From positions 124,001 to 188,000 of IMG/VR virus record IMGVR_UViG_3300020084_000003: a stretch of DNA of 64,000 bases. One strand, written 5' to 3'. A model generated the notes under the pieces. That model searched no databases. It was not told the DNA's origin and was given only the letters and a program-made list of their open reading frames with translations. Positions 283 to 28,197 of the stretch are shown here, piece by piece. Each line of letters opens with the position of its first letter. The stretch's first letter is position 1. The position numbers were made by a program, and so were the translations under genes.

Positions 283-717
283 ATGGACCCATACCAAATT
301 GGTGAAGGCTACAGAGAAACCATCTTTCACAAAAAAGGTGGTTTGTTTTAACTTGAAAAAGAAATAGTGTTGTCTTGTGTAAGATGGCACATTGGAAAAA
401 TGTTTATAATAAGCATCGAAATAAATGGGTTTGTAAAAGAAAAGAACATATCTATACCTATGCCAGATGGCATGGAGCCTATTGTATTTGAGAACAAAGA
501 TTACAAAAATATCTATACACCTGAAAACTTTGTGTATGACAAGGAAGTGGTCATTAAAAATAGAAACCTTGTGAGTGGAGTGATTTTTCGATTCTCTAGA
601 AACTCCGGTTCTGAAATAATAACTGCGCCAATGATATATCAAGATTGCATTTATTATACAAGTCACAAATATATACCTTTAACAATTAATAGTATACAGG
701 AAAACGACAATGGATAG
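283..717 (+). pseudogene. Paralog-array member interrupted by an in-frame TAA at 349-351, or a shorter CDS 367-717
   Basis: ATG 283 is in frame with ORF 367-717. The full span is 144 codons, matching its siblings. A TTGACA promoter element lies at 245, and the C-terminus has 'YQDCIY'. Confidence 0.45.
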
Positions 718-1129
718 TATTGAAGAAGCTATTAAAGAAATATATAAAACGACCTCTTTGAAGTTTGAATATAATGGCATCCATTGTGCAATTCACAAGA
801 AGCTGTTTAATGCGGAACTTTATGTGAATTTGGATCAGGCCGAAGATACAGAAAAGAGAATAGGCAAATATATTGGCTTTGATTTTGAATACGATATAAA
901 CAAGCATTTTCTTCCCAATACGAACATACAAATTCAAAAGAAACCAAATTTTGGCCTTGTTTTTGTCAACGAAGTAAAGCCCATTGAAATAAACCTTACG
1001 CTTGTGAGAAAGGAAGTAGAATATAAAACGAACACGTTATATAAAGGATGTGTTTTCAAAAGATCACAATGTTTAAATCCTGCGCGGTCTATTTTTGATA
1101 ACTGTGAAGGGGTAGATGGTTTAGAATAA
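710..1129 (+). CDS. Hypothetical protein, tandem paralog array
   Basis: 139-aa ORF overlapping the upstream stop, with a 'YKGCVF...FDNCE' motif. Confidence 0.75.
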   Translation: MDSIEEAIKEIYKTTSLKFEYNGIHCAIHKKLFNAELYVNLDQAEDTEKRIGKYIGFDFEYDINKHFLPNTNIQIQKKPNFGLVFVNEVKPIEINLTLVRKEVEYKTNTLYKGCVFKRSQCLNPARSIFDNCEGVDGLE

Positions 1130-1149
1130 CAACTCAATAGGATATAGAT

Positions 1150-1587
1150 ATGGAAAACGAGGTTTCAAAACTTATAGGTCGTTTCTTGGAAATTTCAAAA
1201 AAGAAGAACGATGATTATGAAGAATATTCTACCAGTGTCAAATCAGACGTTGAACCCCAGATGGACATTGCTTTAGAATTTTGGTATGATTTTTGCGAAA
1301 TTGTCGTAACGATATATTGTCATGCGTCAGTTTATGATGCTGAAAAATTCATAGTAGAATTGCCTAGTGGTGAAACGCTGTATTACAACCATTACTCTAC
1401 AAATACGGTCAACATTAGAAACATTGACACGAACGGATATGATATTCTCTTCTTTGTTGTATTTGAAAAAGAATACGAAGAAAAACAAGCAAAAGAAAGG
1501 TTAAATATCAAATATAAAAACTGCGTTGTAAACAATTATATGCTCTCTGATAATTCAGTAGAAGGATGTGAATTTTATGAAAGGTGA
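1150..1587 (+). CDS. Hypothetical protein, tandem paralog array
   Basis: 145 aa with an AGGA RBS and a 'YKNCVV...EGCEF' motif. Confidence 0.75.
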   Translation: MENEVSKLIGRFLEISKKKNDDYEEYSTSVKSDVEPQMDIALEFWYDFCEIVVTIYCHASVYDAEKFIVELPSGETLYYNHYSTNTVNIRNIDTNGYDILFFVVFEKEYEEKQAKERLNIKYKNCVVNNYMLSDNSVEGCEFYER

Positions 1588-1978
1588 TAGTAAAAAACTG
1601 GTGGATATTTACACTAGGCAAATGCAAGGGCTTGATACATCTCCATATAGGATATTGGTTAATCAATCGAAATATTTGGACGTTTATTCTATGGGGGTCG
1701 AAGATATCACTATGGAAGAGTTTGGAATTTCCAATATAGACCATGAACAGTTTAATCTGAAAACCATAAAAGACTCATTTCAAAAACCTGAATTTCATAG
1801 CTTTGAAGTTGATAACTTGATTCTCATATACCCATTAAGATTGACATTTTTTGTGGGAACTATAGAATACCATTTGAATGTAAAACATAATAACTGCATA
1901 TTCAAATTAGGCCAGAAGAAATACTATGAAACTATTAACGAGCATAATTGTGTATGGTGTTTAGATGATGTTGGGTAA
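1577..1978 (+). CDS. Hypothetical protein, tandem paralog array
   Basis: 'HNNCIF...HNCVW' motif. The start is probably MKGDSKK. Confidence 0.7.
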   Translation: MKGDSKKLVDIYTRQMQGLDTSPYRILVNQSKYLDVYSMGVEDITMEEFGISNIDHEQFNLKTIKDSFQKPEFHSFEVDNLILIYPLRLTFFVGTIEYHLNVKHNNCIFKLGQKKYYETINEHNCVWCLDDVG

Positions 1979-2393
1979 AACTGAAAACAAGCTACTTGAA
2001 ATGTCAAAAATAAGTGGAAATGGAGTAACTATAAGCATTGATCCGTATAAAGTAAAAATCATGATTAGATATGATGAATTTTGGCAATTCGCAGATATTA
2101 TTAGCAGTATATTCGATCAGCAAATTTCCGAAGAAGATTTCGAATTCTGCAAAGTTGTATATGGTGGTGCAATTGCGCCTGATGCAAAATACTTCATAAA
2201 CTCCTCTAGTTTTGCACATTTTCAAAACATGAAATTGGAAAAGCCCATATTGATAAATGGTAGAATAAAATCCACTAATCTTTATATCATCAATATGGAT
2301 TACACCAATTGCGTATTTGAATGTGAAAAGCCAGTAACAAAAATATATAAAATTGCCAGAAGCGATAAAGACTGCATATGGAGCAAAACATGA
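1965..2393 (+). CDS. Hypothetical protein, tandem paralog array
   Basis: Shares 'FAHFxNM..KPI.I...INMDYTxCxFxC' with the next ORF. Confidence 0.75.
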   Translation: MMLGKTENKLLEMSKISGNGVTISIDPYKVKIMIRYDEFWQFADIISSIFDQQISEEDFEFCKVVYGGAIAPDAKYFINSSSFAHFQNMKLEKPILINGRIKSTNLYIINMDYTNCVFECEKPVTKIYKIARSDKDCIWSKT

Positions 2394-2794
2394 GCATTGA
2401 AGAGACAATATTGGAACATTCCAAACATTCTAGAATTTTTATATTACTCAATAGTTCAAAAAACTACGATGTGCTAGAATATAATTACAGCAATTTCGGT
2501 GAATTTCAGGCAGAGATTGAAACCCTATTCAATGTGGATATAGAGAAAGATGATTTTGAGATATACGTGGATGATCCAATTACAGATATGCAACTGTTTA
2601 GGTATAAACATCAATTCGCTCATTTCAAAAACATGCATTTTAAAAAGCCCATAGTAATACGAGCATCATATGCATATGGAGATATATACCACTATATAAA
2701 CATGGACTATACTAGTTGCATATTTGATTGCAGTGAAAAATTGGTTAATACTAGATCAAGGGTCAAAACGGATTGTATATATTTGGGTGATTAA
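2390..2794 (+). CDS. Hypothetical protein, tandem paralog array
   Basis: Clear paralog of 1965-2393, with an ATGA overlap. Confidence 0.75.
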   Translation: MSIEETILEHSKHSRIFILLNSSKNYDVLEYNYSNFGEFQAEIETLFNVDIEKDDFEIYVDDPITDMQLFRYKHQFAHFKNMHFKKPIVIRASYAYGDIYHYINMDYTSCIFDCSEKLVNTRSRVKTDCIYLGD

Positions 2795-2806
2795 AAGGGT
2801 ATTGAA

Positions 2807-3226
2807 ATGAAGAATGACATAAGCAAATTTATCGGCTATTATGTGAATATGGCTAAAAAAGGAGAATTTCTGGATGAGATTGTTGATTCAATTTCTGAAA
2901 TTAAAATAGAAGTCAATTCATATGTGGGTTCCCAACATGCTCGATATTTAGATATTGAAGTAATTACACCATACCATATAGGAAATGACCCAATTATGCT
3001 TTTACCATCGAATGAAATATTTCATTTATATCATGATTTGATCGTATTGAAAAACCTCGCATTTAACGATATCCGAATACATATAGAAACCGATACTCCA
3101 TTTCCTAAAAATACGATCAATGTAAATGACGCATATAGATATAAAATCGAAATGATTAATTGCGTTTGTCCCGATTATAAAAGGGACATATATGAATTTA
3201 AAAACTGTGAAATATTTTCATGCTAG
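2807..3226 (+). CDS. Hypothetical protein, tandem paralog array
   Basis: The N-terminus MKNDISKFIG resembles MENEVSKLIG of 1150. It has a 'INCVC...FKNCEIF' motif. Confidence 0.75.
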   Translation: MKNDISKFIGYYVNMAKKGEFLDEIVDSISEIKIEVNSYVGSQHARYLDIEVITPYHIGNDPIMLLPSNEIFHLYHDLIVLKNLAFNDIRIHIETDTPFPKNTINVNDAYRYKIEMINCVCPDYKRDIYEFKNCEIFSC

Positions 3227-3485
3227 TTTGAGACACAACTAGGCAAAAGAACAAACCGTGAACAAAAAATCAGCTTGACAAAAATCGTGATTCTAAGATA
3301 TTCTGGTGGTGGACCCGAATCGAAATATGAGAATCAAAAAGAGCCAAGAATATCATAGGATCGAAACATGCGTCAAGTAAAAATAAGAACGAGGTTTTTT
3401 CATTTTAGGGCTTGCATTGAGATTGATTCTTCCCTAGATATGAAATCACCGAAACGGCGAACCCGCCAGCAAAAGGACAGTTATC

Positions 3486-3674
3486 ATGACCTACGATCAA
3501 GCCAATGCCGCCGCCCGCGTCCTGCGTGAAGCTGGTCAATATGATGCAGCAGAACATATGGAGGTAGTCGCGGAAACTGCCCGTCGCCAGCATTTCCAAG
3601 ACATGGCACAGAAATGCTATGACGACCCGGATTTTGCACTAGCCTATGAAGAGGACATGCGAGAATTTAGATAG
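3486..3674 (+). CDS. Small hypothetical early protein
   Basis: Own promoter, AAGGA RBS, and a terminator AAAAAGCCCTTTGGGGCTTTTTT at 3676-3700. Confidence 0.75.
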   Translation: MTYDQANAAARVLREAGQYDAAEHMEVVAETARRQHFQDMAQKCYDDPDFALAYEEDMREFR

Positions 3675-4000
3675 GAAAAAAGCCCTTTGGGGCTTTTTTT
3701 AATGCGTCCTGAGAACAAAACGTGAACGTGAAAACACCCCTGTTTTTGGCCTCTGAGCGGCCTTTGATGTTTCCGGGTAGGGTGATGAGGCATGACGGCG
3801 CAACGGGCTTCTACGGGCAAAATAGAGCGTCTGGGAACGTGTCTGCATCGGAACATGAGTCTTAGGGTATCAACTCGGCAAAAGAACAAACCATGAACAA
3901 AAAAAGATTCAAAAAAATGCGTTTTCCCTATTGCGAATCGGAACGGGAACGCATATTCTTTAGTTATAGAGACAGACACACACCAACCCCGGAGGCTACC

Positions 4001-4234
4001 ATGACCGCTCGCATCCAACTCGACACCTTCAACGGTCGCGGCTCGCAGCATCACCTGAAAAATCCGAAGACCCCGGCAGAAGAAAAAGCCCTGATCGCGG
4101 GCGGCTCTAAAGTCCGGTTTCAATCCACCCCTATCTCGAAAAAAGAAGAGGCGGAAAATTTCATCGCCGCCCGTGCGAAACTCGCCCGCAACAGCAAGGC
4201 AAAAGTCACTCTGGAAAAAGCCCCTTGGGAATAA
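4001..4234 (+). CDS. Small basic protein, VxLxxxPW-tail family (MTARIQLDTFNGRGSQHHLK...VTLEKAPWE)
   Basis: GGAGG RBS at 3991. Close paralog of 7841-8071. Confidence 0.8.
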   Translation: MTARIQLDTFNGRGSQHHLKNPKTPAEEKALIAGGSKVRFQSTPISKKEEAENFIAARAKLARNSKAKVTLEKAPWE

Positions 4235-4485
4235 GGGGAACGGGCGGGGGAAACCCCGCCTTCCTTGTTTCACGTGAAACAATCTCGCAATGAAAAAAGT
4301 TGAAAAAGGGGATTGACCAAAATCAGCAAGGCATGATATTCTGAAATAGAATCAAAAATTTTTTAGATGATTCGCATGAAGATTCTATTTCAGAATATCA
4401 CCGAATCACGATATCCGTCAAGAGGAAAAATCGTTCACGTTTTGTTCTCTATGGGGAAAAAGAAAAAGCCCCGAAGGGCTTGATC

Positions 4486-4764
4486 TTATGCCGCGAGGGC
4501 TTTCATCAAAATGTCTTCAAGTTCGGTTTCTTCCGGTTCATCTTCATAGATGCGGTTTTCCATGAAGAGCGGACCTTGCCACTTGTCCAACATGAAATTG
4601 AATTGCTTGCGGACAAGGCGCATTTTCCACTGAGTCCGAACCGAAATGAATTCGTCCATATAGAAAGAGGTATCAAATTCCATGATTTCCGAAAAAGTCA
4701 TGGCGGCGATTTCCGCGCGGATGGCGACGAAAGCAGCGCGGGCGAGTTTTTTGGATGTAAACAT
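4486..4764 (-). CDS. Hypothetical early protein (MFTSKKLA...)
   Basis: AAAGGA RBS and terminator AAAAAGCCCCGAAGGGCTT. Confidence 0.7.
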   Translation of the reverse strand: MFTSKKLARAAFVAIRAEIAAMTFSEIMEFDTSFYMDEFISVRTQWKMRLVRKQFNFMLDKWQGPLFMENRIYEDEPEETELEDILMKALAA

Positions 4765-4991
4765 GGCTGATCCTTTCCAGATCAAGAGGGTTAAAGCTGG
4801 CCGGAACCTCGTTCCGTTAAGACATAGATAGACCATGATTCTGATTCCCGCAAGAGATATTTTCAACTATTTTTCAGTTATTTTGGGGATTGACGCATTG
4901 CAATATCCTATGATATTCTTCCCGCCAGACCGAATCACGTTCACGTTTTGTTCTCTATAGGGAAAAAGAAAAAGCCCCGAAGGGCTTGATC

Positions 4992-5114
4992 TTATTTTTC
5001 CCAAGGGGCTTTTGGCAGGCTGACCGGTTTTTTCGGGGTTTCCACTACCATCTGCGCGAGTTTGGCATCGGTGGAGTTGAGGGCAGTCACTTGGATCATC
5101 TTTTGAACGAACAT
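4992..5114 (-). CDS. 40-aa peptide, VxLxxxPW-tail family (MFVQKMIQVTAL...PVSLPKAPWEK); not in the ORF track
   Basis: Read by hand. It has an AAGGA RBS, an upstream promoter and a downstream terminator. Confidence 0.7.
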   Translation of the reverse strand: MFVQKMIQVTALNSTDAKLAQMVVETPKKPVSLPKAPWEK

Positions 5115-5488
5115 TTCCGGTCTTCCTTCTCTGGACGCGACCCCTTGCCGCGTTTCCTGATTCCTAGATAGGCCATGATGGCGAGTCGTGCAAGAGGAAA
5201 AATGAAAAAAGTTTGCCCGCCGTAGACCCCTCTATTTTGGCCTGTGACGGGCATTGACGTTTCCGGGTAGGGCGATGCCCCTGTGAGCCTTGCGGGGCTT
5301 CCTACCGCGCCACAGCGACTAGGACGACATACCCCGGACGATCCAGACGTATTTTGTGACGAAAGGAATTGTGCGGATAGTCGGCACGGAATTTCTCGAC
5401 AGTCCGCACAAATAGGTCAGGGAATTGAGTCGCCCATGATACCATCATTTCAACTGTGACAGATGCGAGTCTTGGCTTTTGCATTTTG

Positions 5489-5923
5489 TTATCCCCATTT
5501 ATCAAATAGATTTCGACATTCATTATGCCATTCTTTCACAGATTTATTATATTCCAAATCACCTTTTAGAAATTCAGCATATGAAATTGCATCCTTTTCT
5601 CGGAAGAAAAGGAAATGGGCGTTGTATCCATTAAGCCCGCCGATATTGTAATCTTTAAGTGATCCGCCAGAAGAATATTCTTCACCCGTATATTGTGAAA
5701 TATAGGTATATGCAAAAGAACCTTTTTTGGTAAATGTTTCATCTTCATATTCAACGCCATTAATTTCATTAAATGACGCAATTTTAGTGAAATGTCTTTT
5801 AGCCAAATACCCGCCTTGCGATACTTCCCAAATATCGGAACCAGTGAGCAAATGCATTTGCTCGACTGTTTCAATTGCGCCTTTAGGATATTCCCGCGCA
5901 GTTGTTCCTTTAAGTTTAATCAT
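5489..5923 (-). CDS. Hypothetical protein
   Basis: 144-aa ORF with an AAGGA RBS. Confidence 0.65.
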   Translation of the reverse strand: MIKLKGTTAREYPKGAIETVEQMHLLTGSDIWEVSQGGYLAKRHFTKIASFNEINGVEYEDETFTKKGSFAYTYISQYTGEEYSSGGSLKDYNIGGLNGYNAHFLFFREKDAISYAEFLKGDLEYNKSVKEWHNECRNLFDKWG

Positions 5924-5952
5924 GTCTTTATCCTTTCCCTATATGTGGCCCC

Positions 5953-6219
5953 TTATCGGGACCACTTGCGATTGATGTTCCACTTTTCCACGACGAGTCC
6001 CGTTTCCGTTTCATCCGTCACGATATACGCGACAGTTTTCTTGACGAGGGCGAAACGGGTTTCTTGATTTGGCCCGACAAAAACCAGATGTTTATAATCG
6101 CGAAATTTGTCCTCGGGGAACGCAGTTGCGTTCATATACTCGAAAGTTTTGCCGTGATCTTTTTCCACGAACATTCCGGCGATTTTGTCTTGCGAGATAT
6201 GAGCGGGGGCATAGGACAT
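5953..6219 (-). CDS. Hypothetical protein
   Basis: AGGAG RBS and own promoter. Confidence 0.7.
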   Translation of the reverse strand: MSYAPAHISQDKIAGMFVEKDHGKTFEYMNATAFPEDKFRDYKHLVFVGPNQETRFALVKKTVAYIVTDETETGLVVEKWNINRKWSR

Positions 6220-6337
6220 GGCGCAACTCCTTTTGGCGCGGTGGGTTTATCCTGTGATACATGATTCGCCTGTCCATGTCAAACCATTATTTCGCCTTGA
6301 CGCACGAAACCGTTGTGTGCTAGTCGTGGAAGTCTGA

Positions 6338-6571
6338 ATGGCAAGGAAAGGAATCATTGTGCTGCCCACATATTACGCAATTGATATTGTTACATCTCGC
6401 AAGGGCTTGCTAATGATGGCGCAGTTTCTTGGGCTTATGGCTTACGGAAATGATTTTGTGCAAGGCAATCGCATGATGACATATGACGCGCGAAACAAGG
6501 TTTTGAGCGTTACGATGACAAAACAAGACGCACTAAAACTGTCGGAAAAATTCAACTTTGAGTTCCAGTGA
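6338..6571 (+). CDS. Hypothetical protein, paralog of 13754-13972
   Basis: Shared PTYYA..IVT...GNRM..YD...DAL.LS..FNFEF. A parS site follows immediately. Confidence 0.75.
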   Translation: MARKGIIVLPTYYAIDIVTSRKGLLMMAQFLGLMAYGNDFVQGNRMMTYDARNKVLSVTMTKQDALKLSEKFNFEFQ

Positions 6572-6756
6572 TTTGTTTCACGTGAAACAATAGCCTTAGA
6601 GTCTTCTAGGCAAAAGAACAAAACGTGAACAAGATTAGGGCTTGACAGCATCATGATTCGATGATATTCTGGACTAGAGACTCGAATCTTCTGGTGATAA
6701 AAATCAGGTTTTACTTTTAGAATATCATATCGAATCGGGGTAAGTAAAGGGGCAAA

Positions 6757-7158
6757 TTATGCCCCCTGAGTCTTTCTTATTAGTTCGCCCATTTCATAGC
6801 TGAACCCGTGCGACCAACAAAAGCCTTCCCGGTCATACTTTGAATTAACATCATCCCCCGTGGCGTCAAACTGCCAGCGGATAACATCGCCCACACGGGC
6901 GTTAAGTTGGACGGCGAGGGCATGAACCCCGCGAATCCAATCATTATATCGGCGGGTTTCATCCTCAACCCGTTGCGCCTCATTGCTGGCGAGTTGCGCG
7001 ACAAGGTAAGAATAATCCTCGTCAAAAGCCTCGACCGAAGCCCAGACGTTCCAGCCGCGCGGGCGGCACCCGTAAACGTCTTTGTAAAGATCGGAGTAGC
7101 AATCATCCACGATCATGCAAACGGAACCAGCGGCGAATTCTTGGTCTTGAGCGAACAT
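6757..7158 (-). CDS. Hypothetical phage protein (YSDLYKDVYGCRPRG motif)
   Basis: AAGGA RBS before MFAQ. The motif is typical of a widespread phage hypothetical family. Confidence 0.7.
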   Translation of the reverse strand: MFAQDQEFAAGSVCMIVDDCYSDLYKDVYGCRPRGWNVWASVEAFDEDYSYLVAQLASNEAQRVEDETRRYNDWIRGVHALAVQLNARVGDVIRWQFDATGDDVNSKYDREGFCWSHGFSYEMGELIRKTQGA

Positions 7159-7412
7159 GGCGATCATCCTTTTTTGCACAGTTTTCCCTCGGAGCATCGC
7201 GCCCCGCAACACCTACGTAGCAGGGAATCACCCTGCTTGTCAAGCGTATATGCAAAGAAAAAATCGAATTATTTGGGGTTGACAGGCCGGGCGATTCTAC
7301 GATATTCTGAAATAGAGAGTCTATGCGAATCACTTGGAAGATTCGAGATTCTATTTCAGAATATCACACTCAGATTTCATGTAAAGATAAAAAAAGCCCC
7401 GAAGGGCTTAAT

Positions 7413-7586
7413 TTATGAAAACTCCCGGTCTACTATTTCCAGACGTTCCCAGACTTGCGCCCACGTGGAGTCGGCGGGAAGATCACACAGAAACATTTCC
7501 GCGTGGAACGTTGCATTGTTTGCAACGTCAATGGCTTCTTCCAGCGACAGTTCGGGGCGGGCTTGGACTTGGGCGAGGATGGACAT
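7413..7586 (-). CDS. 57-aa acidic hypothetical protein (MSILAQVQARPEL...)
   Basis: Read by hand. AAGGA RBS and a terminator at 7390-7409. Confidence 0.6.
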   Translation of the reverse strand: MSILAQVQARPELSLEEAIDVANNATFHAEMFLCDLPADSTWAQVWERLEIVDREFS

Positions 7587-7840
7587 TTTCAGTTTCCTTC
7601 AAACATGGTTGGTTCCGAGGACGTTCCCCGTGCCTCATACGTAGCTGATTCTTGTGTTTGTGTCAATATAGGAAAAGCATTATTTTAGTTTATTTTTGGG
7701 GTTGACGTAAAAAGTGAGTATGATATTCTGGACTAGACTCTTGATTCTCGCGTTCACGATTCGTTCTCATTGTGGGTTGTTCACGTTTTGTTCTGTTTCA
7801 CGTGAAACAAAAGCCCCCCGTTTCCGAGGGGCTTTTCCTT

Positions 7841-8071
7841 TTACCAAGGCATCGCGGGGAGGGAGACTTTCGCGGTTGACTTGCGGGCGAGGCGGGCGCG
7901 GGCGGCTTTCGCGTTTTCGATTTCTTCCGCTTTCGTGATCGGAGTATGTTGAAAGCGGACCTTGTTCCCGCCAGCGATCAGAGCGGCCTCTTCCGCTTTG
8001 CTTTTGGGGTTTTTCAGGTGGTGTTGGCTTCCGCGACCGTTGAAGGTATCCAGTTGAACCGCTGCGACCAT
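7841..8071 (-). CDS. Small basic protein, VxLxxxPW-tail family (...VSLPAMPW)
   Basis: Paralog of 4001-4234 in inverted orientation. Confidence 0.8.
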   Translation of the reverse strand: MVAAVQLDTFNGRGSQHHLKNPKSKAEEAALIAGGNKVRFQHTPITKAEEIENAKAARARLARKSTAKVSLPAMPW

Positions 8072-8619
8072 CTTTCCGTTCCTTCCGCTGTGGGCCTCTG
8101 CCCGTTTCCATACTTAAAGAATATGCACTCTTGATCCGATTCGCAACCCCCCAAATGCACTTTTTTGAATCTTTTTTGTTCATGATTTGTTCTCAGGTTT
8201 CGCGGCGAAACTGCGTTCACGTTTTGTTCTTTGGCCCTCTATTTTGCGCTGTGAGCGGCCTTGTGGGTTTTCGGGTGTGTGGGTATGGCAAAAGCCCGTA
8301 GGAACCACCTACGGGCTTCTACGGGCTTGTGAGAGGCATTATCGAAAACCTAGTGCCGCTGCGAAAAACTCCTTGAATAGATCGAAGAAGATTAGCAGAG
8401 GAAGGATTACCGCCATCAGCTTGATGATGAGATAAACCTTTAGTAGTGTGATGAATGCCCCCATCAGGTTGTTTTGAGGATGTAAAGAGCAGCCAGACCC
8501 AGAAATCCAAACGCTACGATGAACAACATATTGTTTTCCTTTCACTTTCCTAGCGGGTTTCACAGACACAACTTGCCAGCATCAAATTGGTTTCATGATG
8601 CTGGCAAGATTCTTCTAAG

Positions 8620-8745
8620 TCACTCGTCTTTCAACTGAAATTTCTTGTGAACCCCCGACTCGTATTGCTTGCGGGCGCTTTTGTTCTTGCGCGCGTTGCG
8701 GATTTGTTGCTTGGCGTTGTTCTTGTCGCGCTTTTGGTCTTTCAT
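8620..8745 (-). CDS. 41-aa highly basic peptide (MKDQKRDKNNAKQQIRNARK...)
   Basis: Read by hand. AAGGA RBS and an upstream promoter. Confidence 0.55.
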   Translation of the reverse strand: MKDQKRDKNNAKQQIRNARKNKSARKQYESGVHKKFQLKDE

Positions 8746-8962
8746 GATCCGGGTTTCCTTCTGTTTCCGGGTTTCTGTATCTTGAATGTATGGGGGGCCA
8801 GATGATTCGTCAATAGGAAAAAATAGGAAAGATTCTTTTTATTTGGGGTTGACAGTGTGGGGTGGGGATAATATTCTGAAATAGAATCCAGAATCATCGT
8901 TCACGATTCGTTCTCATGGGGTTTCGCTGCGAAACTGTTTCACGTGAAACAATGACATTGCC

Positions 8963-9154
8963 CTAAAGCAATGCCATAAGTTGAAACATGATGATGATAG
9001 CAGACAAACAAATAGTAAGAAGAAACGAACAAGTCAAAGCGTTAACTGTATCTTTAGCAATCGCGCAACGGATGCTAAGGTTAAGCAAAATCAACCCCAT
9101 CATGCAAAACGTAGCAGTAGCGCAAGAAGCGATGAAAAGAAGAAAGTGTTCCAT
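8963..9154 (-). CDS. Small two-TM membrane protein
   Basis: Hydrophobic 63-aa ORF flanked by two parS sites. Confidence 0.55.
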   Translation of the reverse strand: MEHFLLFIASCATATFCMMGLILLNLSIRCAIAKDTVNALTCSFLLTICLSAIIIMFQLMALL

Positions 9155-9218
9155 ACTATTTTCCTTTTGTTTCACGTGAAACATAGGGGCGGGATGATCC
9201 CGCCCCCTGTTGATTGCA

Positions 9219-9524
9219 TCAGGCTTGCACCGCTTCCGCTTGTGCAGCACGTTCGGCACGTTTCGCCGCGTTGCGTTCCATCGTGGCAACCCACGTCCGC
9301 GCACGGCCCGTCAGGGCAGGAACATGGCGCGGACGACCACGCTTGCCTTCAATCCGTTGTTCCTGAATCTCGACCAGACCAGCCTCGACCAGTTGCGCCG
9401 TCAGGTGACGCGAAGGGATGTTTTCAGCATCGCCCGCCTTGATCGCGACCAGCGCGGCAAGCTTGGCCTCTTTGCTGTTGAAGGTTGCCGGGCGACCACG
9501 GGCGGCTTTGATTTCTTTCGTCAT
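9219..9524 (-). CDS. AT-hook (RGRP) / winged-helix-like DNA-binding protein, copy 1
   Basis: Two RGRP motifs and the pattern 'PSRH...LVEAGLVE...RGRP..VPALTG'. Paralogs at 13167, 23299 and 25705. Confidence 0.75.
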   Translation of the reverse strand: MTKEIKAARGRPATFNSKEAKLAALVAIKAGDAENIPSRHLTAQLVEAGLVEIQEQRIEGKRGRPRHVPALTGRARTWVATMERNAAKRAERAAQAEAVQA

Positions 9525-11024
9525 GATGTAGTCCTTTCTTTGCTGTTGGGCGTCTTGCCCGTTTCCATGATTAAGAGATAGAGCATGATTCTGATTCGTG
9601 CAAGCACAAAATGCGATAGGAACGAAAATAGTTTTTGCATCTTCTCGGCAAAAGAACAAAACGTGAACGAATAGGTTTCGCGGCGAAACCACGACGCAAT
9701 GAGAACGAATCATGAACGGTGATTCTGGATTCTATTTCAGAATATCATACTCAGGTTTAGTGTCAACAAGAAAAAAAGCCCCGAAGGGCTTTTCCTCATT
9801 CCATGAAGTTTTCAAATTCTGTCCAGCTATATTCTTCCGCAACCCCATAGGTTTCTTGGAATTGCTTGAACTCACGTTCTGCCGCATCGTGCGAAAGATT
9901 GTAGTGGGTGAGCAGGAGGTTCATAATGTCTGCGGGCGAGAGCATGGCGGGTTCCTTTCCCTTGGCTATGATTAAGATATAGCATCAGATTGTGATTCGT
10001 GCAAGAGGTAAAATGACTTTTTTCAAATTATTTTTGGGGTTGACAGGATAGGGGAGGGGATGATATTCTGAAATAGAATCAAGAATCACCGTTCATGATT
10101 CGTTCTTATAGGTTTCGCCGCGAAACTGTTTCACGTGAAACAAAAGAAAGAGGGGGCGTTATGCCCCCTGTTTCCATCCTTCTGCGATTTTTTCTTGCAT
10201 ATCATCAAATGCGATATGTTTGGGGATAACGGTTTGCGTCATAGCTTTACCATCCCAATACAGAGTCGCAGTTACATCTTCGTGCCCGAAAGTGGACTCG
10301 TAGGTGATTTTGAGGTTGGAGTTGGTAATAGTAATCATGGCGGGGTTCCTTTCCTTTGCCGATTATTCTTTATAGCATTAGCGGCAGGTTGCGTCAACAG
10401 GAAAATGCGTCACCAGATAGATCAAATGAATCCTTTCACAATGTGCGGATTCTTTGAAATAGTGATTTGTTGCTTTGATGAAAGCAAACCGGAACGGGCG
10501 AAATGCCAGACGTTTATTGCGATAGACACGGGAACAGATAGGTTCCCAACGGAAACCGCGCAGAAACTTGTGGTTCCACTCGCAGGAACGATAGTAATGA
10601 GTCAAGTCGCGCATTGCCTTATCTCCTGCTAGGGTTTCCATCTATATTTATAGTTGCACGATTCGGGTGTCTATGTCAATATCTAAAAAATAATTGTGAC
10701 GCGAACATGACACTTGCAAACAACCTAAACGGGTGCTAAGGTTCTGGCAGTTGTAACGAAAGGAGCGAATCATGTTTGATATTGTCAAGAAAATAATTAC
10801 ATTCCCCGGAAAATTTGTCGATTGGTTTGAGGCGGAACGTGGAACTGGTGAAGGAAAAAATGGTTGGGTAGGTAAACCATCGCGGGACTAGGGAGGATGA
10901 AAGACTCCTCTTTTCCCTATTGACAGCATGGGGAGGGCATGATATTCTGAAATAGAATCTTGATTCTTGCGTTCATGATTCGTTCTTTTGCGGATAAAAG
11001 AAAAAGCCCCGAAGGGCTTTCCTG

Positions 11025-11213
11025 TTACCAAGGGGCTTTTGCCAGAGTGACTTTGACTTTCCGCTTTGCCGCTGCGCGTTTCTCTTGAGCCAGAGCGAAA
11101 GCCTTTTCATCTTTTGCGGTAATGGCAGGAGCGGCACAATTTCCGCAACGCTTCTCAAAATCGACCCGGTTCATGTTAGCGTGGGAATTGAAGTATTGAG
11201 CGGAGACTTGCAT
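11025..11213 (-). CDS. Small basic protein, VxLxxxPW-tail family (...KVTLAKAPW)
   Basis: Own promoter, RBS and terminator. Shared C-terminal motif. Confidence 0.75.
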   Translation of the reverse strand: MQVSAQYFNSHANMNRVDFEKRCGNCAAPAITAKDEKAFALAQEKRAAAKRKVKVTLAKAPW

Positions 11214-11318
11214 CGGGTTGCCCTTTCTTGGCTGGTGTAATTATAGAATATGCCTTGCCAGATGATTCGTCAACAGGAAAAATGAAGTTTTTTGAATCTT
11301 TTTTGTTCACGGTTTGTT

Positions 11319-11837
11319 CTATATATAACCATGTTCCCGTTCTGCTTCATTTCTAGCAACTATTGCATCATCCAATTCTTTGAATCTTCCTATATGTTTT
11401 CTTTTACCATTTCCATCTCTAATTCTGACAACATAAGCATTTTTGAAAAAGTATATATTTCTTTCTTTTAACTTATTAGGTTTAACTACATTTTTATAAT
11501 TAATACTTTGTGAAACATCTCTAAGATTTTTTATTCTATTATCTTTTTTATCTTTATTAATATGATCTATCTCACATTTAGGCCATTCGCCGTAAACAAA
11601 AGCCCACGCTAATCTATGTGCGGAACAAATAATTTCATTATCCGCATATCCCAAATATATGTAACCATTTTTGTTAGACCCTGCAATTTTACCAGAATAC
11701 TCATTATTCCAATTAAGTTTTCTTTTAGTATTATATGGACGATGGTGTTCTTTTCTTTCTTTCCAATAAAATAATCCAGTATCTTTATTATAAGAAACTA
11801 GTTCTTTCCATAATTCTAAATTAGAATCACTTTTCAT
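11319..11837 (-). mobile_element. Freestanding HNH homing endonuclease with a C-terminal AP2-like domain
   Basis: 'AHRLAW..VYGEWP..EIDHINKDKKDNRIKNLR' and 'HIGRFKELDDAIVARNEAE'. AT-rich relative to its flanks. Confidence 0.85.
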
Positions 11838-13166: not shown

Positions 13167-13457
13167 TTAGGCTTCCGCCTTGGCAGCGCGACGGGCCGCG
13201 TTGCGTTCCATAGTCGCAAGCCACGAACGGGCTTTGCCGGTCAGGGCAGGGACATGAGCGGGACGGCCACGCTTGCCAGTAGGTTCCGCCGTTTTCATCT
13301 CGACCCGGCCCATCTCGACCAGTTTCAGCAGCAGATGGCGCGAGGGGATGTTCTCAGCATCGCCCGTATGGATGGCGCGGAGTGCAGCCACGATGGCGTC
13401 ACGGTTGGCGAAAGTAGCGGGACGGCCACGGGCGGCTTTGGTTTCGGTGTTGGTCAT
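13167..13457 (-). CDS. AT-hook (RGRP) / winged-helix-like protein, copy 2
   Basis: Close paralog of 9219-9524. Confidence 0.75.
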   Translation of the reverse strand: MTNTETKAARGRPATFANRDAIVAALRAIHTGDAENIPSRHLLLKLVEMGRVEMKTAEPTGKRGRPAHVPALTGKARSWLATMERNAARRAAKAEA

Positions 13458-23298: not shown

Positions 23299-23706
23299 TT
23301 ATTCTTCGGGGTTGGACGAAACGTCAGCGAAATCTTCCGATTCGGCTTCGGCAGCGGCAGCAGCTTGCGCGGCCTTTTCCTCTGCCTTGGCGCGGTTGCG
23401 TTCGATCAGCTTGACCCACGAATTGCCCTTGCCAGTCAGCGACGGGACCAGAGCGGGACGGCCACGGCCACGGGTTTCGCCTTCCGCCAGCGTGGCAGCT
23501 TCCAGCTTGACCATGCCCTCTTCAACCAGTTGCTTGACGATGAAGCGCGACGGCATCTTGTCAGCGTTGCTATCGCGGATTGCGACCAGAAGATCAAACT
23601 TGCTGTCGCGATCAGCCAGCGTGGGCTTGCGGCCATTGTTGGCGCGACCATCGGTTTTGACTTCGGCTTGAGCGGCGACTTCGTTGGTTTCAACTTGAGC
23701 GTTCAT
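23299..23706 (-). CDS. AT-hook / winged-helix-like protein, copy 3
   Basis: PSRF..KQLVEEGMV...RGRGRP..VPSLTGKG. GC-rich codon usage. Confidence 0.75.
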   Translation of the reverse strand: MNAQVETNEVAAQAEVKTDGRANNGRKPTLADRDSKFDLLVAIRDSNADKMPSRFIVKQLVEEGMVKLEAATLAEGETRGRGRPALVPSLTGKGNSWVKLIERNRAKAEEKAAQAAAAAEAESEDFADVSSNPEE

Positions 23707-27591: not shown

Positions 27592-28197
27592 ATGATGTTT
27601 AATGAAATTGATATAAAGTTATTAAAACGATTAATAACTTATGATTATAATACAGGTAAAGCTTTTTGGAAAAAAAGAGACAAAGAATATTTTTATTATG
27701 ACAACAGAACTTTAAACACATGGAATTCAAAATTTGCAGGCACAGAAATTAAAAGCTTAAAAGATGGTTACTATGTTTTTAGACATGAAATAAATGGTGT
27801 TAAATATAGAATAAAATTGCATAGAGTCATATTCGCATATCATCACGGTTATTGGCCTAACGACTTATTAGATCATAAAGATGGAAACAAAATTAATAAT
27901 AAGATAGACAATATAATTCTTTCAAATAAATCTGAAAATGCAAAAAATAGCAAACCAAAAAGCGGCAGTGGATATAAAAATATAACATGGGAACCTAGAA
28001 TAAATAGATGGTCAATTAGATTTAGAGTTTCGGCTGGACATAATATATCAGGTGGTAGCTATAAAAACATAGAAGACGCAGTTAAAGCAAGAAATGAATT
28101 ATTCTTAATATATAATCATCCTCCCGCCAGAGACAATCCAAATTGGGAATATATAAGAGAAAAAGAGGGGAATCAACCCCTCAATTCACCAATTTGA
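27592..28197 (+). mobile_element. Freestanding HNH homing endonuclease with an AP2-like domain
   Basis: 'LHRVIFAYHHGYWP..LLDHKDGNKINNKIDN' and 'GSYKNIEDAVKARN'. AT-rich, opposite strand to its neighbours. Confidence 0.85.

What the first reader, a model, noticed from the sequence alone, without database searches (positions are those of the whole stretch)
3249..11319. Sixteen alphaproteobacterial LexA boxes in 8 kb, many not positioned as operators
Seen: the boxes often come in pairs (7752+7779, 8178+8215, 9654+9703). Many lie beside terminators or just downstream of the gene-less promoters rather than over gene promoters. Five have GANTC in the spacer (GTTC-A(C/T)GATTC-GTTC, either orientation). 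I saw none beyond 11.3 kb. Inference: either LexA titration that de-represses host recombination and repair for phage use, or coupling of early transcription to host SOS status and methylation.
Basis: partly seen in the sequence, partly recalled or inferred. Interest (0 to 1): 0.75.

Follow-up and report, generated by a model that had tools for sequence, protein, structure and literature searches.

The report
LexA-type operators wired into phage early promoters
A 285-kb T4-like lake phage carries 16 perfect copies of the site that alphaproteobacterial LexA (the DNA-damage repressor) binds, each at a fixed distance from a strong early promoter, so part of its early programme probably reads the host's SOS state.

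Summary
The window has 17 GTTC-N7-GTTC matches (1.9 expected). Sixteen share GTTCAYGNTTYGTTC, all lie at 3249-11319, and none occurs elsewhere in the 284,776-bp genome. There are no one-mismatch copies, and all 16 are intergenic.

The genome is a freshwater T4-like phage with no integrase and no LexA gene. The boxes sit in the first 8 kb of a 36-kb early region of tiny genes separated by promoter/terminator cassettes, similar to PeSLs.

The boxes are not loosely placed:
- Six start 19-22 nt after the -10 of strong "class I" promoters that face the 3' end of a convergent gene. Five of these hold the GATTC.
- Three end 11 nt before a -35.
- Three end 31-32 nt before the -35 of three paralogous genes.

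Related contigs (41-88% protein identity) keep the same boxes and spacings.

Operators I collected upstream of imuA, recA and lexA in alphaproteobacterial genomes give TGTTCT-N5-TGTTCT. The phage boxes fit this except for A at position 5.

Best reading (about 0.5): these are host-LexA operators that gate antisense and paralogue promoters. Titration is not excluded, but the geometry does not require it. Binding, host identity and transcription are all untested.

The parts
3249..3263 (-). Box GTTCACGGTTTGTTC, class A. It ends 11 nt before the -35 of class-I promoter 3275-3304(+), centre about -55. It lies just after the last gene of the 140-aa paralogue array.
3713..3727 (-). Box GTTCACGTTTTGTTC, secondary. 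It lies 12 nt after the terminator (3678-3700) of gene 3486-3674(+).
3884..3898 (-). Box GTTCATGGTTTGTTC, class C. It is followed by an A-tract/GATTC/A-tract and ends 32 nt before the -35 of promoter 3931-3959(+), which drives paralogue gene 4001-4234. Centre about -75.
4433..4447 (+). Box GTTCACGTTTTGTTC, class A. It ends 11 nt before the -35 of class-I promoter 4392-4421(-). It lies between that promoter and the terminator (4466-4481) of gene 4486-4764(-).
4939..4953 (+). Box GTTCACGTTTTGTTC, class B. It starts 19 nt after the -10 of class-I promoter 4890-4919(+), which faces the terminator of gene 4992-5114(-).
6616..6630 (-). Box GTTCACGTTTTGTTC, class A. It ends 11 nt before the -35 of class-I promoter 6642-6670(+). 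It follows the palindrome at 6575 and the stop of gene 6338-6571(+).
7612..7626 (+). Seventeenth, loose GTTC-N7-GTTC match (GTTCCGAGGACGTTC). It is probably chance, but it lies about +21 from a sense promoter (about 7647-7675, - strand) of gene 7413-7586.
   Evidence: 0.24 chance matches expected in the 8.6-kb region
7752..7766 (+). Box GTTCACGATTCGTTC (holds GANTC), class B. It starts 22 nt after the -10 of class-I promoter 7702-7729(+), which faces the terminator of gene 7841-8071(-).
7779..7793 (+). Box GTTCACGTTTTGTTC, second box of the pair (+49 from the -10 end). It is followed directly by the palindrome GTTTCACGTGAAAC and the terminator.
8178..8192 (+). Box GTTCATGATTTGTTC, class C. In the - direction the order is box, A-tract/GATTC/A-tract, promoter 8118-8146(-) and paralogue gene 7841-8071(-). 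Centre about -77.
8215..8229 (+). Box GTTCACGTTTTGTTC, upstream partner of 8178. The two are separated by hairpin GGTTTCGCGGCGAAAC.
8899..8913 (+). Box GTTCACGATTCGTTC (GANTC), class B. It starts 21 nt after the -10 of class-I promoter 8849-8877(+), which faces the 3' end of operon 9524->8963(-).
9654..9668 (-). Box GTTCACGTTTTGTTC, second box downstream of promoter 9739-9766(-) (+70 from the -10 end). It lies about 45 nt upstream of the proximal promoter of the wHTH gene 9219-9524(-).
9703..9717 (-). Box GTTCATGATTCGTTC (GANTC), class B. It starts 21 nt after the -10 of class-I promoter 9739-9766(-). This is the one class-B case that runs in the same direction as the gene.
10091..10105 (+). 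Box GTTCATGATTCGTTC (GANTC), class B. It starts 21 nt after the -10 of class-I promoter 10040-10069(+), which faces the terminator of gene 10159-10338(-).
10971..10985 (+). Box GTTCATGATTCGTTC (GANTC), class B. It starts 22 nt after the -10 of class-I promoter 10920-10948(+), which faces the terminator (11001-11022) of paralogue gene 11025-11213(-).
11305..11319 (+). Box GTTCACGGTTTGTTC, class C. It ends 31 nt before the -35 of promoter 11245-11273(-), which drives paralogue gene 11025-11213(-). It abuts the stop codon of HNH gene 11319-11837(-).
3275..11273 (.). The 13 class-I promoters (TTGAC-N16-19-(TG)ATATTCT) of the box sub-region: 3275-3304+, 3347-3376-, 4313-4342+, 4392-4421-, 4890-4919+, 6642-6670+, 7279-7308+, 7702-7729+, 8849-8877+, 9739-9766-, 10040-10069+, 10920-10948+, 11245-11273-. 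Ten of them have a box at a fixed distance.
4001..4234 (+). The 77-aa 'DTFNGRGSQHH...KAPW' protein. Paralogues are at 7841-8071(-), 11025-11213(-) and the short 4992-5114(-). This is the gene family most tightly bracketed by boxes: class C upstream and class B downstream.
9219..9524 (-). The 101-aa predicted winged-helix DNA-binding protein, with paralogues at 13167-13457(-) and 23299-23706(-). It is a candidate phage-encoded binder for the boxes or for the palindromes.

Best explanation
The 16 boxes are protein-binding operators built into the promoter/terminator cassettes of the phage's hyperplastic immediate-early region. The protein that binds them is most likely the LexA repressor of an alphaproteobacterial host.

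Shown:
- The motif is a direct repeat of (T)YGTTC with an 11-bp period, and it is kept perfectly in all 16 copies.
- It occupies three fixed positions relative to promoters. Class B boxes start 19-22 nt after the -10 of a strong sigma-70-type 'class I' promoter, which puts the box centre at about +21 to +24. Class A boxes end 11 nt before a -35 (centre about -55). Class C boxes end 31-32 nt before a -35 (centre about -75).
- Related phage fragments keep both the motif and these spacings.

Inferred:
- While LexA is intact it sits at +21 to +24 and blocks the class-I promoters. Five of these six promoters point into the 3' end of a convergent gene and have no gene of their own.
- LexA also occupies the upstream sites of three further class-I promoters and of three paralogous 62-77-aa genes.
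- When LexA falls, the antisense promoters fire and the upstream sites empty. LexA could fall because the host is in SOS when infected, or because phage-induced breakdown of host DNA activates RecA. Either way, expression of this 8-kb module flips.
- The GATTC inside five of the six +21 to +24 boxes would let CcrM methylation modulate occupancy.
- The direction of each effect (repression or activation) is not established.
For: Non-randomness:
- 16 perfect sites, 0 one-mismatch sites, none elsewhere in 285 kb.
- All 16 are intergenic (P about 6e-6).

Geometry:
- Box start to -10 end is 19, 21, 21, 21, 22, 22 nt in this phage, and 16, 21, 21 nt in relative L358.
- Box end to -35 is 11, 11, 11 nt here, 11 nt in L360 and 10 nt in L046.
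- The longer spacing is 31-32 nt here and 31 nt in L358 and L360.

Relatives:
- L358, L359 and L360 share up to 12 small genes at 41-88% amino-acid identity, in shuffled order.
- They carry 7, 4 and 5 boxes against fewer than 0.4 expected.
- GTTC and TT at positions 9-10 are invariant in 48 of 48 boxes, while positions 5-8 vary.

Match to LexA:
- imuA upstream regions have a GAAC-N7-GAAC box in 28 of 30 alphaproteobacterial genomes, with consensus GAACAAAAnnnGAAC. One of them is GTTCATGTTTTGTTC.
- Host sites have T before each GTTC and T after the second one, as the phage boxes do.
- The commonest phage variant scores in the top 2.5% of random spacers and at the 41st percentile of host sites.
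- The exact 15-mer lies upstream of an imuA-like gene, an S24-peptidase gene and dnaE in alphaproteobacterial genomes.

No phage LexA:
- PF01726 and PF00717 are not found in the phage genome.

Alphaproteobacterial host signals:
- GANTC is enriched threefold across the early region.
- A GANTC lies within 35 nt downstream of 43 of 45 class-I promoters, against a 21% background.
- The best rIIA hits are phages of Rhodobacteraceae.

Precedent:
- Host regulators are co-opted by virulent phages, for example CtrA boxes and phi29/Spo0A (PMC9437464).
Against: - No binding, transcript or host data exist. No RNA run holds the phage, and the complex prediction was not folded.
- Position 5 is A in 16 of 16 boxes here and in 35 of 48 across relatives. 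It is A in only 2 of 73 host operators, where T dominates.
- The AYG-type box is only about twofold enriched over a reversed control in 401 alphaproteobacterial genomes (52 against about 23), and no genome has more than 3. The spacer is therefore constrained by something other than generic LexA preference.
- The phage encodes at least 3 winged-helix paralogues and a box-bracketed 77-aa family, either of which could be the real binder.
- A box centred at +23 is further downstream than classical LexA operators.
- Cultured T4-like phages of alphaproteobacteria (Cr30, phiM12, Atu_ph07) show no such cluster.
Confidence: 0.5

Rival explanations
1. A phage-encoded DNA-binding protein, not host LexA, recognises the boxes. 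Candidates are the 101-aa winged-helix family (9219-9524 and two paralogues) and the 77-aa family that the boxes bracket. This would be an early auto- or cross-regulatory circuit, possibly a LexA mimic like GIL01 gp6.
For: - The invariant A-Y-G at positions 5-7 is not what host LexA operators prefer.
- TTCACG(T) is shared between 11 of the boxes and the 14-bp palindrome GTTTCACGTGAAAC, which has 10 copies in the same sub-region.
- Atlas structure matches suggest a winged-helix fold for the 101-aa protein, with TM 0.6-0.75 to MarR/PadR families.
- The 77-aa genes carry boxes on both sides, the classic layout of autoregulation.
Against: - No LexA DNA-binding domain is detected in the phage.
- None of the small proteins of the region is encoded in the other box-rich viral contigs, including L046, except for genuine close relatives.
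- The same motif, including its flanking T positions, is the operator of imuA, recA and lexA in bacteria.
- The structural hints are weak: model pLDDT 0.62 for the 101-aa protein and AF2 pLDDT 57 for the 77-aa family.
Confidence: 0.17
2. The array is mainly a LexA sink. As the genome replicates, 16 high-affinity sites per copy titrate LexA and de-repress the host SOS regulon, or LexA-controlled prophages and defences. Position relative to promoters would be incidental.
For: - Site density is high: 16 in 8 kb here.
- Tandem 11-bp-phased runs of 6-8 GTTC half-sites lie after terminators in the related-grammar contig L046, and L119 has similar runs.
- Several boxes (3713, 7779, 8215, 9654) have no obvious promoter role.
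Against: - Twelve of the 16 boxes sit at three quantised distances from promoters, in a fixed orientation, and relatives conserve this. A pure decoy needs neither.
- The boxes are confined to one sub-module rather than spread over the genome.
- The usefulness of host SOS genes to a T4-like phage that probably shuts the host off is doubtful (general knowledge, not tested).
Confidence: 0.12
3. The boxes are bound by another host regulator that reads direct repeats with an 11-bp period, for example an OmpR/PhoB-family response regulator. The match to LexA would be coincidental.
For: - The half-site TTYGTTC repeated at 11 bp, and phased tandem arrays, are typical of winged-helix response regulators (general knowledge).
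- Position 5 disagrees with LexA operators.
Against: - No known alphaproteobacterial regulator with this half-site was identified.
- The motif equals the experimentally defined GTTC-N7-GTTC SOS box (PMC3323433, PMC9578287).
- It also equals the imuA/recA/lexA upstream sites found here.
Confidence: 0.08
4. No protein reads the boxes. They are conserved stretches of the repeated promoter/terminator cassettes, kept identical by recombination between cassettes (PeSL-type shuffling and gene conversion), or they act in the short class-I transcripts as RNA.
For: - The region is a mosaic of repeated modules.
- Contigs from other samples join different cassettes at the repeats (joints 8954->9169, 9184->6569, 9670->10940, 10152->6573).
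- Gene order is shuffled in L358.
- Class-B boxes lie inside the predicted short transcripts, and their first half can pair with an upstream GAAUC.
Against: - Flanks differ completely between classes A, B and C while the 15-mer stays perfect.
- Across relatives the variable positions are those of the spacer, and the GTTC/TT positions never change. That is the footprint of base-specific recognition.
- Boxes occur in both transcribed and untranscribed positions and orientations.
- Only 1 of 6 class-B transcripts folds better than shuffles at z < -2.5.
Confidence: 0.08

Closest known systems
Alphaproteobacterial SOS box (LexA operator GTTC-N7-GTTC; Rhodobacter sphaeroides, Rhizobium, Caulobacter crescentus)
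   Same: - The same direct repeat and spacing.
- The same extended features as in the imuA/recA/lexA upstream sites collected here: T before each GTTC, T-rich positions 8-11, and T after the second GTTC.
   Different: - A-Y-G at positions 5-7, where host sites have T at position 5.
- 16 copies in 8 kb of a virulent-type phage.
- Fixed positions at about +23, -55 and -75, rather than overlapping the -35/-10.
- Five boxes have an embedded GANTC.
LexA-controlled switches of temperate phages and other mobile elements (CTXphi, GIL01, coliphage 186 and others; reviewed by Fornelos 2016, cited in PMC9437464)
   Same: Host LexA sites on a phage genome couple phage transcription to the SOS state, and the phage does not encode LexA itself.
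   Different: - Those elements are temperate and use one or a few operators at a lysis/lysogeny switch.
- This is a T4-like genome with no integrase.
- Its sites are spread over about a dozen promoter cassettes of an early hyperplastic region, mostly on antisense promoters.
Co-option of host master regulators by virulent phages: CtrA boxes in phages of Alphaproteobacteria ('lytic deferment', PMC9437464) and Spo0A sites in phi29
   Same: Multiple promoter-associated sites for a host global regulator in a lytic phage, inferred to adjust the lytic programme to host physiology.
   Different: - The regulator differs: LexA and DNA damage, rather than the cell cycle or sporulation.
- The architecture differs: convergent promoters.
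PeSL cassettes (promoter-early stem-loop) of T4-type phages (PMC2839356, PMC4122927)
   Same: - Small ORFan early genes in a hyperplastic region, each separated by a conserved composite terminator/promoter motif.
- Evidence of cassette shuffling at the repeats.
   Different: - The most conserved promoter usually points against the genes (35 of 45 on the opposite strand).
- The cassettes carry GANTC sites.
- In one sub-region they carry LexA-type boxes. No such operator content is described for PeSLs in the two papers read.
GIL01 gp6, a phage-encoded LexA-like DNA-binding protein (PMC6182141)
   Same: It would resemble the rival reading, in which a small phage winged-helix protein reads LexA-like sites.
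   Different: No LexA_DNA_bind homologue is detected in this phage. The winged-helix candidates are only structure-level hints.

Membership tests
Alphaproteobacterial LexA operator (SOS box) | Direct repeat GTTC-N7-GTTC | tested here: met
   All 16 sites match exactly.
Alphaproteobacterial LexA operator (SOS box) | Extended consensus of genuine operators, derived here from 73 imuA/recA/lexA upstream sites: T at position 0, T-rich positions 8-11, T at position 16 | tested here: met
   Across 48 phage boxes, position 0 is a pyrimidine in 48 of 48, positions 9-10 are TT in 48 of 48, position 11 is T or C only, and position 16 is T in 35 of 48.
Alphaproteobacterial LexA operator (SOS box) | T (never A) after the first GTTC (position 5) | tested here: not met
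   Position 5 is A in 16 of 16 boxes here and in 35 of 48 with relatives. It is A in 2 of 73 host sites. This is a preference seen in my sample, not a published defining rule. The exact phage 15-mer does occur upstream of imuA-like, S24-peptidase and dnaE genes.
Alphaproteobacterial LexA operator (SOS box) | Bound by LexA and released on RecA-mediated cleavage | not testable with these tools
   The complex-prediction job was not folded and gives no evidence. This needs EMSA or footprinting.
Alphaproteobacterial LexA operator (SOS box) | The organism that provides the protein has this LexA type | not testable with these tools
   The host is unknown (lake-water metagenome). The indirect alphaproteobacterial signals are GANTC enrichment and rIIA relatives.
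Alphaproteobacterial LexA operator (SOS box) | Placed where binding can affect a promoter | tested here: met
   Twelve of the 16 lie at fixed distances from predicted promoters (about +23, -55 and -75), and relatives conserve the spacings. The promoters are predicted, not mapped.
PeSL-type regulatory cassettes of T4-like phages | Conserved composite terminator + early-promoter motif between small genes of a hyperplastic region | tested here: met
   45 near-identical promoters and recurrent stem-loops lie between tiny genes.
PeSL-type regulatory cassettes of T4-like phages | The promoter drives the downstream gene (same direction) | tested here: not met
   35 of 45 class-I promoters lie on the strand opposite to the genes. 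A second, weaker promoter type (TTGAC/TTGCAC-GAATC...) serves the genes.
PeSL-type regulatory cassettes of T4-like phages | Recombination between cassettes shuffles genes among relatives | tested here: met
   Joints between non-adjacent cassettes appear in contigs from other samples, and gene order is shuffled in L358. The joint evidence comes from low-depth contigs.
Virulent phage co-opting a host global regulator (phi29/Spo0A, CtrA-box phages) | Several promoter-associated sites for a host regulator in a phage with no lysogeny module and no copy of the regulator | tested here: met
   No integrase and no LexA are found, and there are 16 sites. That the regulator actually binds is not tested.
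Phage-encoded LexA homologue (GIL01 gp6 type) | A phage gene with a LexA DNA-binding domain | tested here: not met
   PF01726 has no match at E <= 1 in the whole genome.

The most novel reading that the evidence does not exclude
A virulent jumbo T4-like phage uses host LexA, together with CcrM methylation of a GANTC built into the operator, as a switch on convergent 'gene-less' promoters. While LexA is intact, the antisense promoters of an immediate-early module are blocked and a box-bracketed paralogue family is expressed. Once LexA is cleaved, antisense transcription shuts that module off. Cleavage could come from prior host damage or from phage-triggered breakdown of host DNA. In this reading the SOS repressor serves as a damage sensor or an infection clock for a lytic phage.
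Probability: 0.3. Interest if true: 0.8.

Novelty: new variant of a known kind. Interest (0 to 1): 0.68.

Why it matters
LexA sites on mobile elements are so far known mainly as lysis/lysogeny triggers of temperate phages. If LexA really binds here, three things follow:
- An obligately lytic, T4-like phage would be shown to read the host's DNA-damage state, and possibly its methylation state, across a dozen early promoter cassettes.
- The widespread 'gene-less' antisense promoters of such hyperplastic regions would gain a regulatory function.
- Metagenomic phages of this kind would gain a sequence marker of alphaproteobacterial hosts.

The same motif recurs in many uncultured viral contigs, as 30-bp-spaced or 11-bp-phased arrays, so the phenomenon is probably broader than this one genome.

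Tried and rejected
- **tRNA or known RNA families in the region:** none.
- **Close relatives in the cultured-phage collection:** none by DNA. The DNA polymerase is only 41% identical to those of cyanomyophages.
- **Pattern GATATTCTGAAATAGAATC in viral contigs:** 9 chance hits with no boxes.
- **The search for related loci with the 101-aa protein:** no relatives. The first attempt failed on wrong coordinates.
- **Complex prediction (LexA dimer + box DNA):** returned 'not folded'. This is no evidence either way.
- **RNA evidence:** no RNA run holds the phage.
- **Read laying:** gave only low-depth fragments. Variation in the one divergent relative (X12) was too sparse to test box conservation.
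- **AF2 model of the 77-aa family:** pLDDT 57, unusable for fold search.
- **Papers with lists of experimental operators:** da Rocha 2008, Erill 2004 and Galhardo 2005 are not held. I derived host sites from genomes instead.
- **A host lineage whose LexA regulon uses the phage's AYG spacer:** none stood out among 401 genomes.
- **Phage GcrA or CcrM:** no GcrA, and only a sub-threshold methyltransferase hit that is really PhoH.
- **sRNA-seed idea for class-B boxes:** not supported by folding.
- **Cultured alphaproteobacterial T4-like phages as models:** no box cluster in Cr30, phiM12 or Atu_ph07.

Full report
**1. Observation**

GTTC-N7-GTTC occurs 17 times in the window against 1.86 expected, and 0 of 100 shuffles reach 17.
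- Sixteen matches share GTTCA[CT]G[GTA]TT[TC]GTTC, and all lie at 3249-11319. The 17th (7612) has an unrelated spacer.
- The window is bases 124001-188000 of a single 284,776-bp contig. That genome has only 7 more loose matches and none of the tight form.
- Allowing mismatches gives 16 perfect sites, 0 with one mismatch and 2 with two mismatches (2.5 expected). There are no decayed copies.
- All 16 are intergenic although 53% of the span is coding (P about 6e-6).

**2. What the genome is**

The genome is an IMG/VR virus record that CheckV rates 100% complete.
- It is T4-like. It has rIIA/rIIB, a gp43-type DNA polymerase (41% identical to those of cyanomyophages), RNase H, a baseplate wedge protein, tail fibres and PhoH.
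- It has no integrase, no LexA DNA-binding or S24 domain, and no GcrA.
- It comes from lake-water metagenomes. Six runs hold the region almost completely.
- The best rIIA hits are phages of Rhodobacteraceae, at about 50% identity.

**3. The region**

Forty-five near-identical strong promoters, TTGAC-N16-19-(TG)ATATTCT, occur in the genome. I call these class I. All lie at window 3275-39131.
- GANTC is threefold enriched over this 36-kb region, at about 8 per kb against about 2.5 per kb.
- 43 of 45 class-I promoters have a GANTC within 35 nt downstream, against a 21% background.
- ORFs supported by a ribosome-binding site and by homology show that nearly all genes from 4.4 kb onwards are tiny and lie on the - strand. 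Yet 35 of 45 class-I promoters are on the + strand.
- A typical class-I promoter sits between the terminator of one gene and the separate, weaker promoter of the next gene (TTGAC/TTGCAC-GAATC...). It fires towards the terminator.
- This layout resembles the PeSL terminator/promoter cassettes of T4-type hyperplastic regions (PMC2839356, PMC4122927). The difference is that here the conserved promoter is mostly antisense.
- Contigs from other samples join non-adjacent cassettes at the repeats, and a relative has the same genes in a different order. The cassettes therefore shuffle.

**4. Where the boxes sit**

I take the transcription start as 7 nt after TATTCT. The boxes fall into classes.

| Class | Boxes | Position | Context |
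|---|---|---|---|
| B | 4939, 7752, 8899, 9703, 10091, 10971 | Start 19-22 nt after the -10; centre +21 to +24; read as GTTC...GTTC in the direction of transcription | Five of the six promoters face the 3' end of a convergent gene. Five of the six boxes hold the embedded GATTC |
| A | 3249, 4433, 6616 | End 11 nt before the -35 of a class-I promoter; centre about -55 | |
| C | 3884, 8178, 11305 | End 31-32 nt before a -35, separated from it by an A-tract/GATTC/A-tract; centre about -75 | Upstream of three paralogous genes (4001+, 8071-, 11213-) |
| Second or terminator-adjacent | 3713, 7779, 8215, 9654 | Second boxes or next to terminators | |

- Classes A and C are both read as GAAC...GAAC towards the promoter. 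They differ by about two helical turns.
- Ten of the 13 class-I promoters in the sub-region have a box at one of these positions.
- The 32 class-I promoters beyond 11.3 kb have none.

**5. Relatives**

- Many contigs hold several copies, as arrays spaced about 30 bp apart (L034, L036, L059, L073, L106, L113) or as 11-bp-phased runs of GTTC (L046, L119).
- About 25 of these contigs share T4-like proteins with this phage.
- A syntenic set of AT-rich contigs keeps one box between a stop codon and a terminator.
- L046 shares the whole grammar: the class-I promoter, GANTC, the palindrome GTTTCACGTGAAAC, and face-to-face promoters flanked by boxes.
- Homologues of the 77-aa protein led to three contigs from other samples, L358, L359 and L360.
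- L358 shares at least 12 of the small genes at 41-88% identity.
- The three contigs carry 7, 4 and 5 boxes against fewer than 0.4 expected, and the same spacings of 21, 10-11 and 31 nt.
- In 48 boxes from five sources, GTTC is fixed by the search. TT at positions 9-10 is also invariant. Position 0 is always a pyrimidine, position 11 is T or C, position 7 is G in 42 and position 16 is T in 35. Positions 5-8 vary.
- Boxes are also gained and lost. The L358 orthologue of the 77-aa gene lacks its class-C box.

**6. Is it the LexA operator?**

The literature gives GTTC-N7-GTTC as the alphaproteobacterial SOS box (PMC3323433, PMC9578287). The papers listing experimental sites were not available, so I collected upstream regions from alphaproteobacterial genomes reached through the genome search.
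- lexA: mostly GTTCTAGTTTGGTTC.
- recA: for example GTTCTATTTTTGTTC.
- imuA: a box in 28 of 30 genomes, with consensus GAACAAAAnnnGAAC. One of them is GTTCATGTTTTGTTC.
- With flanks, the host half-site is T-GTTC-T repeated at 11 bp.
- The phage boxes agree at position 0, positions 9-11 and position 16.
- The main phage variant scores in the top 2.5% of random spacers and at the 41st percentile of host sites. The GATTC variants score at about the 14th percentile.
- The exact 15-mer lies upstream of an imuA-like gene, an S24-peptidase gene and dnaE in alphaproteobacterial genomes.

The disagreement is at position 5.
- It is A in all 16 phage boxes but in only 2 of 73 host sites.
- The AYG form is only about twofold enriched over a reversed control in 401 genomes, with at most 3 per genome.
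- The spacer is therefore constrained beyond generic LexA preference. Possible causes are a host-specific LexA, a second factor (TTCACGT is shared with the palindrome), or concerted evolution of the cassettes.

One genome in these samples (G045) is flagged unpublished. It entered only the tallies. No site sequence from it was used.

**7. Mechanism proposed**

Shown:
- The motif, its perfection, its fixed geometry and its conservation in relatives.
- The absence of a phage LexA.

Inferred:
- Host LexA occupies the boxes.
- At +21 to +24 it blocks the class-I promoters that would otherwise transcribe into the 3' ends of convergent early genes.
- At -55 and -75 it modulates three more class-I promoters and the three paralogue promoters.
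- Loss of LexA flips the module. LexA could be lost through SOS in the host, or through RecA activation once phage nucleases attack host DNA.
- The GATTC inside the promoter-proximal boxes offers a route for CcrM methylation to tune occupancy.
- The sign of each effect is unknown.

**8. Rivals**

- **A phage winged-helix or 77-aa protein as the true binder.** The 101-aa protein matches MarR/PadR folds at TM 0.6-0.75, from a low-confidence model. No such protein co-occurs with boxes outside close relatives.
- **A pure LexA sink.** This is not excluded, and phased arrays in other contigs favour high avidity. However, it does not explain the fixed geometry.
- **Another regulator that reads direct repeats.**
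- **Cassette homology or RNA function with no DNA-binding protein.** Folding gives little support, and the substitution pattern argues for base-specific recognition.

**9. Comparison and novelty**

- LexA operators on temperate elements are known, and so is co-option of CtrA or Spo0A by lytic phages (PMC9437464).
- PeSL cassettes are known.
- I did not find a description of an array of LexA-type operators at fixed positions on mostly antisense early promoters of a T4-like phage, with an embedded GANTC, in the library.
- Cultured T4-like phages of alphaproteobacteria (Cr30, phiM12, Atu_ph07) have no such cluster. HTVC008M has only a few scattered T-rich boxes.
- I therefore rate it a new variant of a known kind, conditional on LexA binding.

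Noticed in passing
window 3275-39131: There are 45 near-identical strong promoters, TTGAC-N16-19-(TG)ATATTCT, and they occur nowhere else in the 285-kb genome. 35 of them lie on the + strand although almost all genes there are on the - strand. Most would therefore make only short transcripts that run into the terminator of the convergent gene.
   Followed up: partly
window 4000-40000: GANTC (the CcrM site) is about threefold enriched over the whole early region. 43 of 45 class-I promoters have one 6-27 nt after the -10. The genes' own promoters carry one directly after the -35 (TTGAC-GAATC). No phage GcrA or CcrM was found.
   Followed up: partly
window 4267, 6575, 7795, 8937, 9169, 10128, 12136, 13110, 14009, 16785: There are ten copies of the perfect 14-bp palindrome GTTTCACGTGAAAC, all within 12.5 kb and mostly just after gene ends. 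It is also present in L046, L358, L359 and L360. In the lake metagenomes, read depth spikes and many foreign contigs break exactly at these sites.
   Followed up: partly
window 8197, 8921, 9675, 10112, 14024: The hairpin GGTTTCGCnGCGAAAC occurs five times, usually between a box and the palindrome. Only the loop base varies.
   Followed up: no
window 3275/3376, 4313/4421, 6642/~6720, 7279/7385: Pairs of class-I promoters face each other, with predicted starts only about 30-45 nt apart. The transcripts would overlap head-on. The same arrangement, flanked by boxes, is found in L046 at 7434/7543.
   Followed up: no
window 3735-3830, 5225-5310, 8232-8340: There are three copies of an element of about 60-100 nt (consensus CCCTCTATTTTGGCCTGTGAGCGGCCTTTGA.GTTTCCGGGTAGGG) in non-coding stretches. 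Two of them lie next to a box. It could be a small RNA.
   Followed up: partly
window 710-3226 (+): Six tandem genes of 136-145 aa sit in a 32-36% GC block directly upstream of the first box. By size and N-terminal similarity they look like paralogues. They have no Pfam or PHROG match.
   Followed up: no
window 9219-9524, 13167-13457, 23299-23706 (all -): There are three paralogues (42-67% identity) of a protein of about 100 aa, with RGRP motifs and a predicted winged-helix fold. A 72%-identical homologue is in L358.
   Followed up: partly
window 7612-7626: The one loose GTTC-N7-GTTC of the region (GTTCCGAGGACGTTC) lies about +21 from a predicted sense promoter of gene 7413-7586. This is the same distance as the class-B boxes, but in the opposite orientation.
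   Followed up: no
window 8954-9169, 9184-6569, 9670-10940, 10152-6573 (joints in runs X9, X12): Contigs from other lake and groundwater samples join non-adjacent cassettes at the repeated elements. Relatives therefore carry different sets and orders of these small genes.
   Followed up: partly
window 11319-11837 (-), 27595-28197 (+): HNH endonuclease genes are inserted in the early region. The first one ends exactly at box 11305-11319.
   Followed up: no
L046 5621-5711 and 9543-9632; L119 472-541 and 629-752: These contigs hold tandem runs of 6-8 GTTC half-sites at an exact 11-bp period. In L046 they lie directly after terminators.
   Followed up: partly
L180 7736, L189 4826: The exact phage 15-mer lies 110-240 bp upstream of the housekeeping dnaE gene in two different Hyphomicrobiales genera (Lichenihabitans, Kaistia). 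This suggests a conserved LexA operator on dnaE.
   Followed up: no
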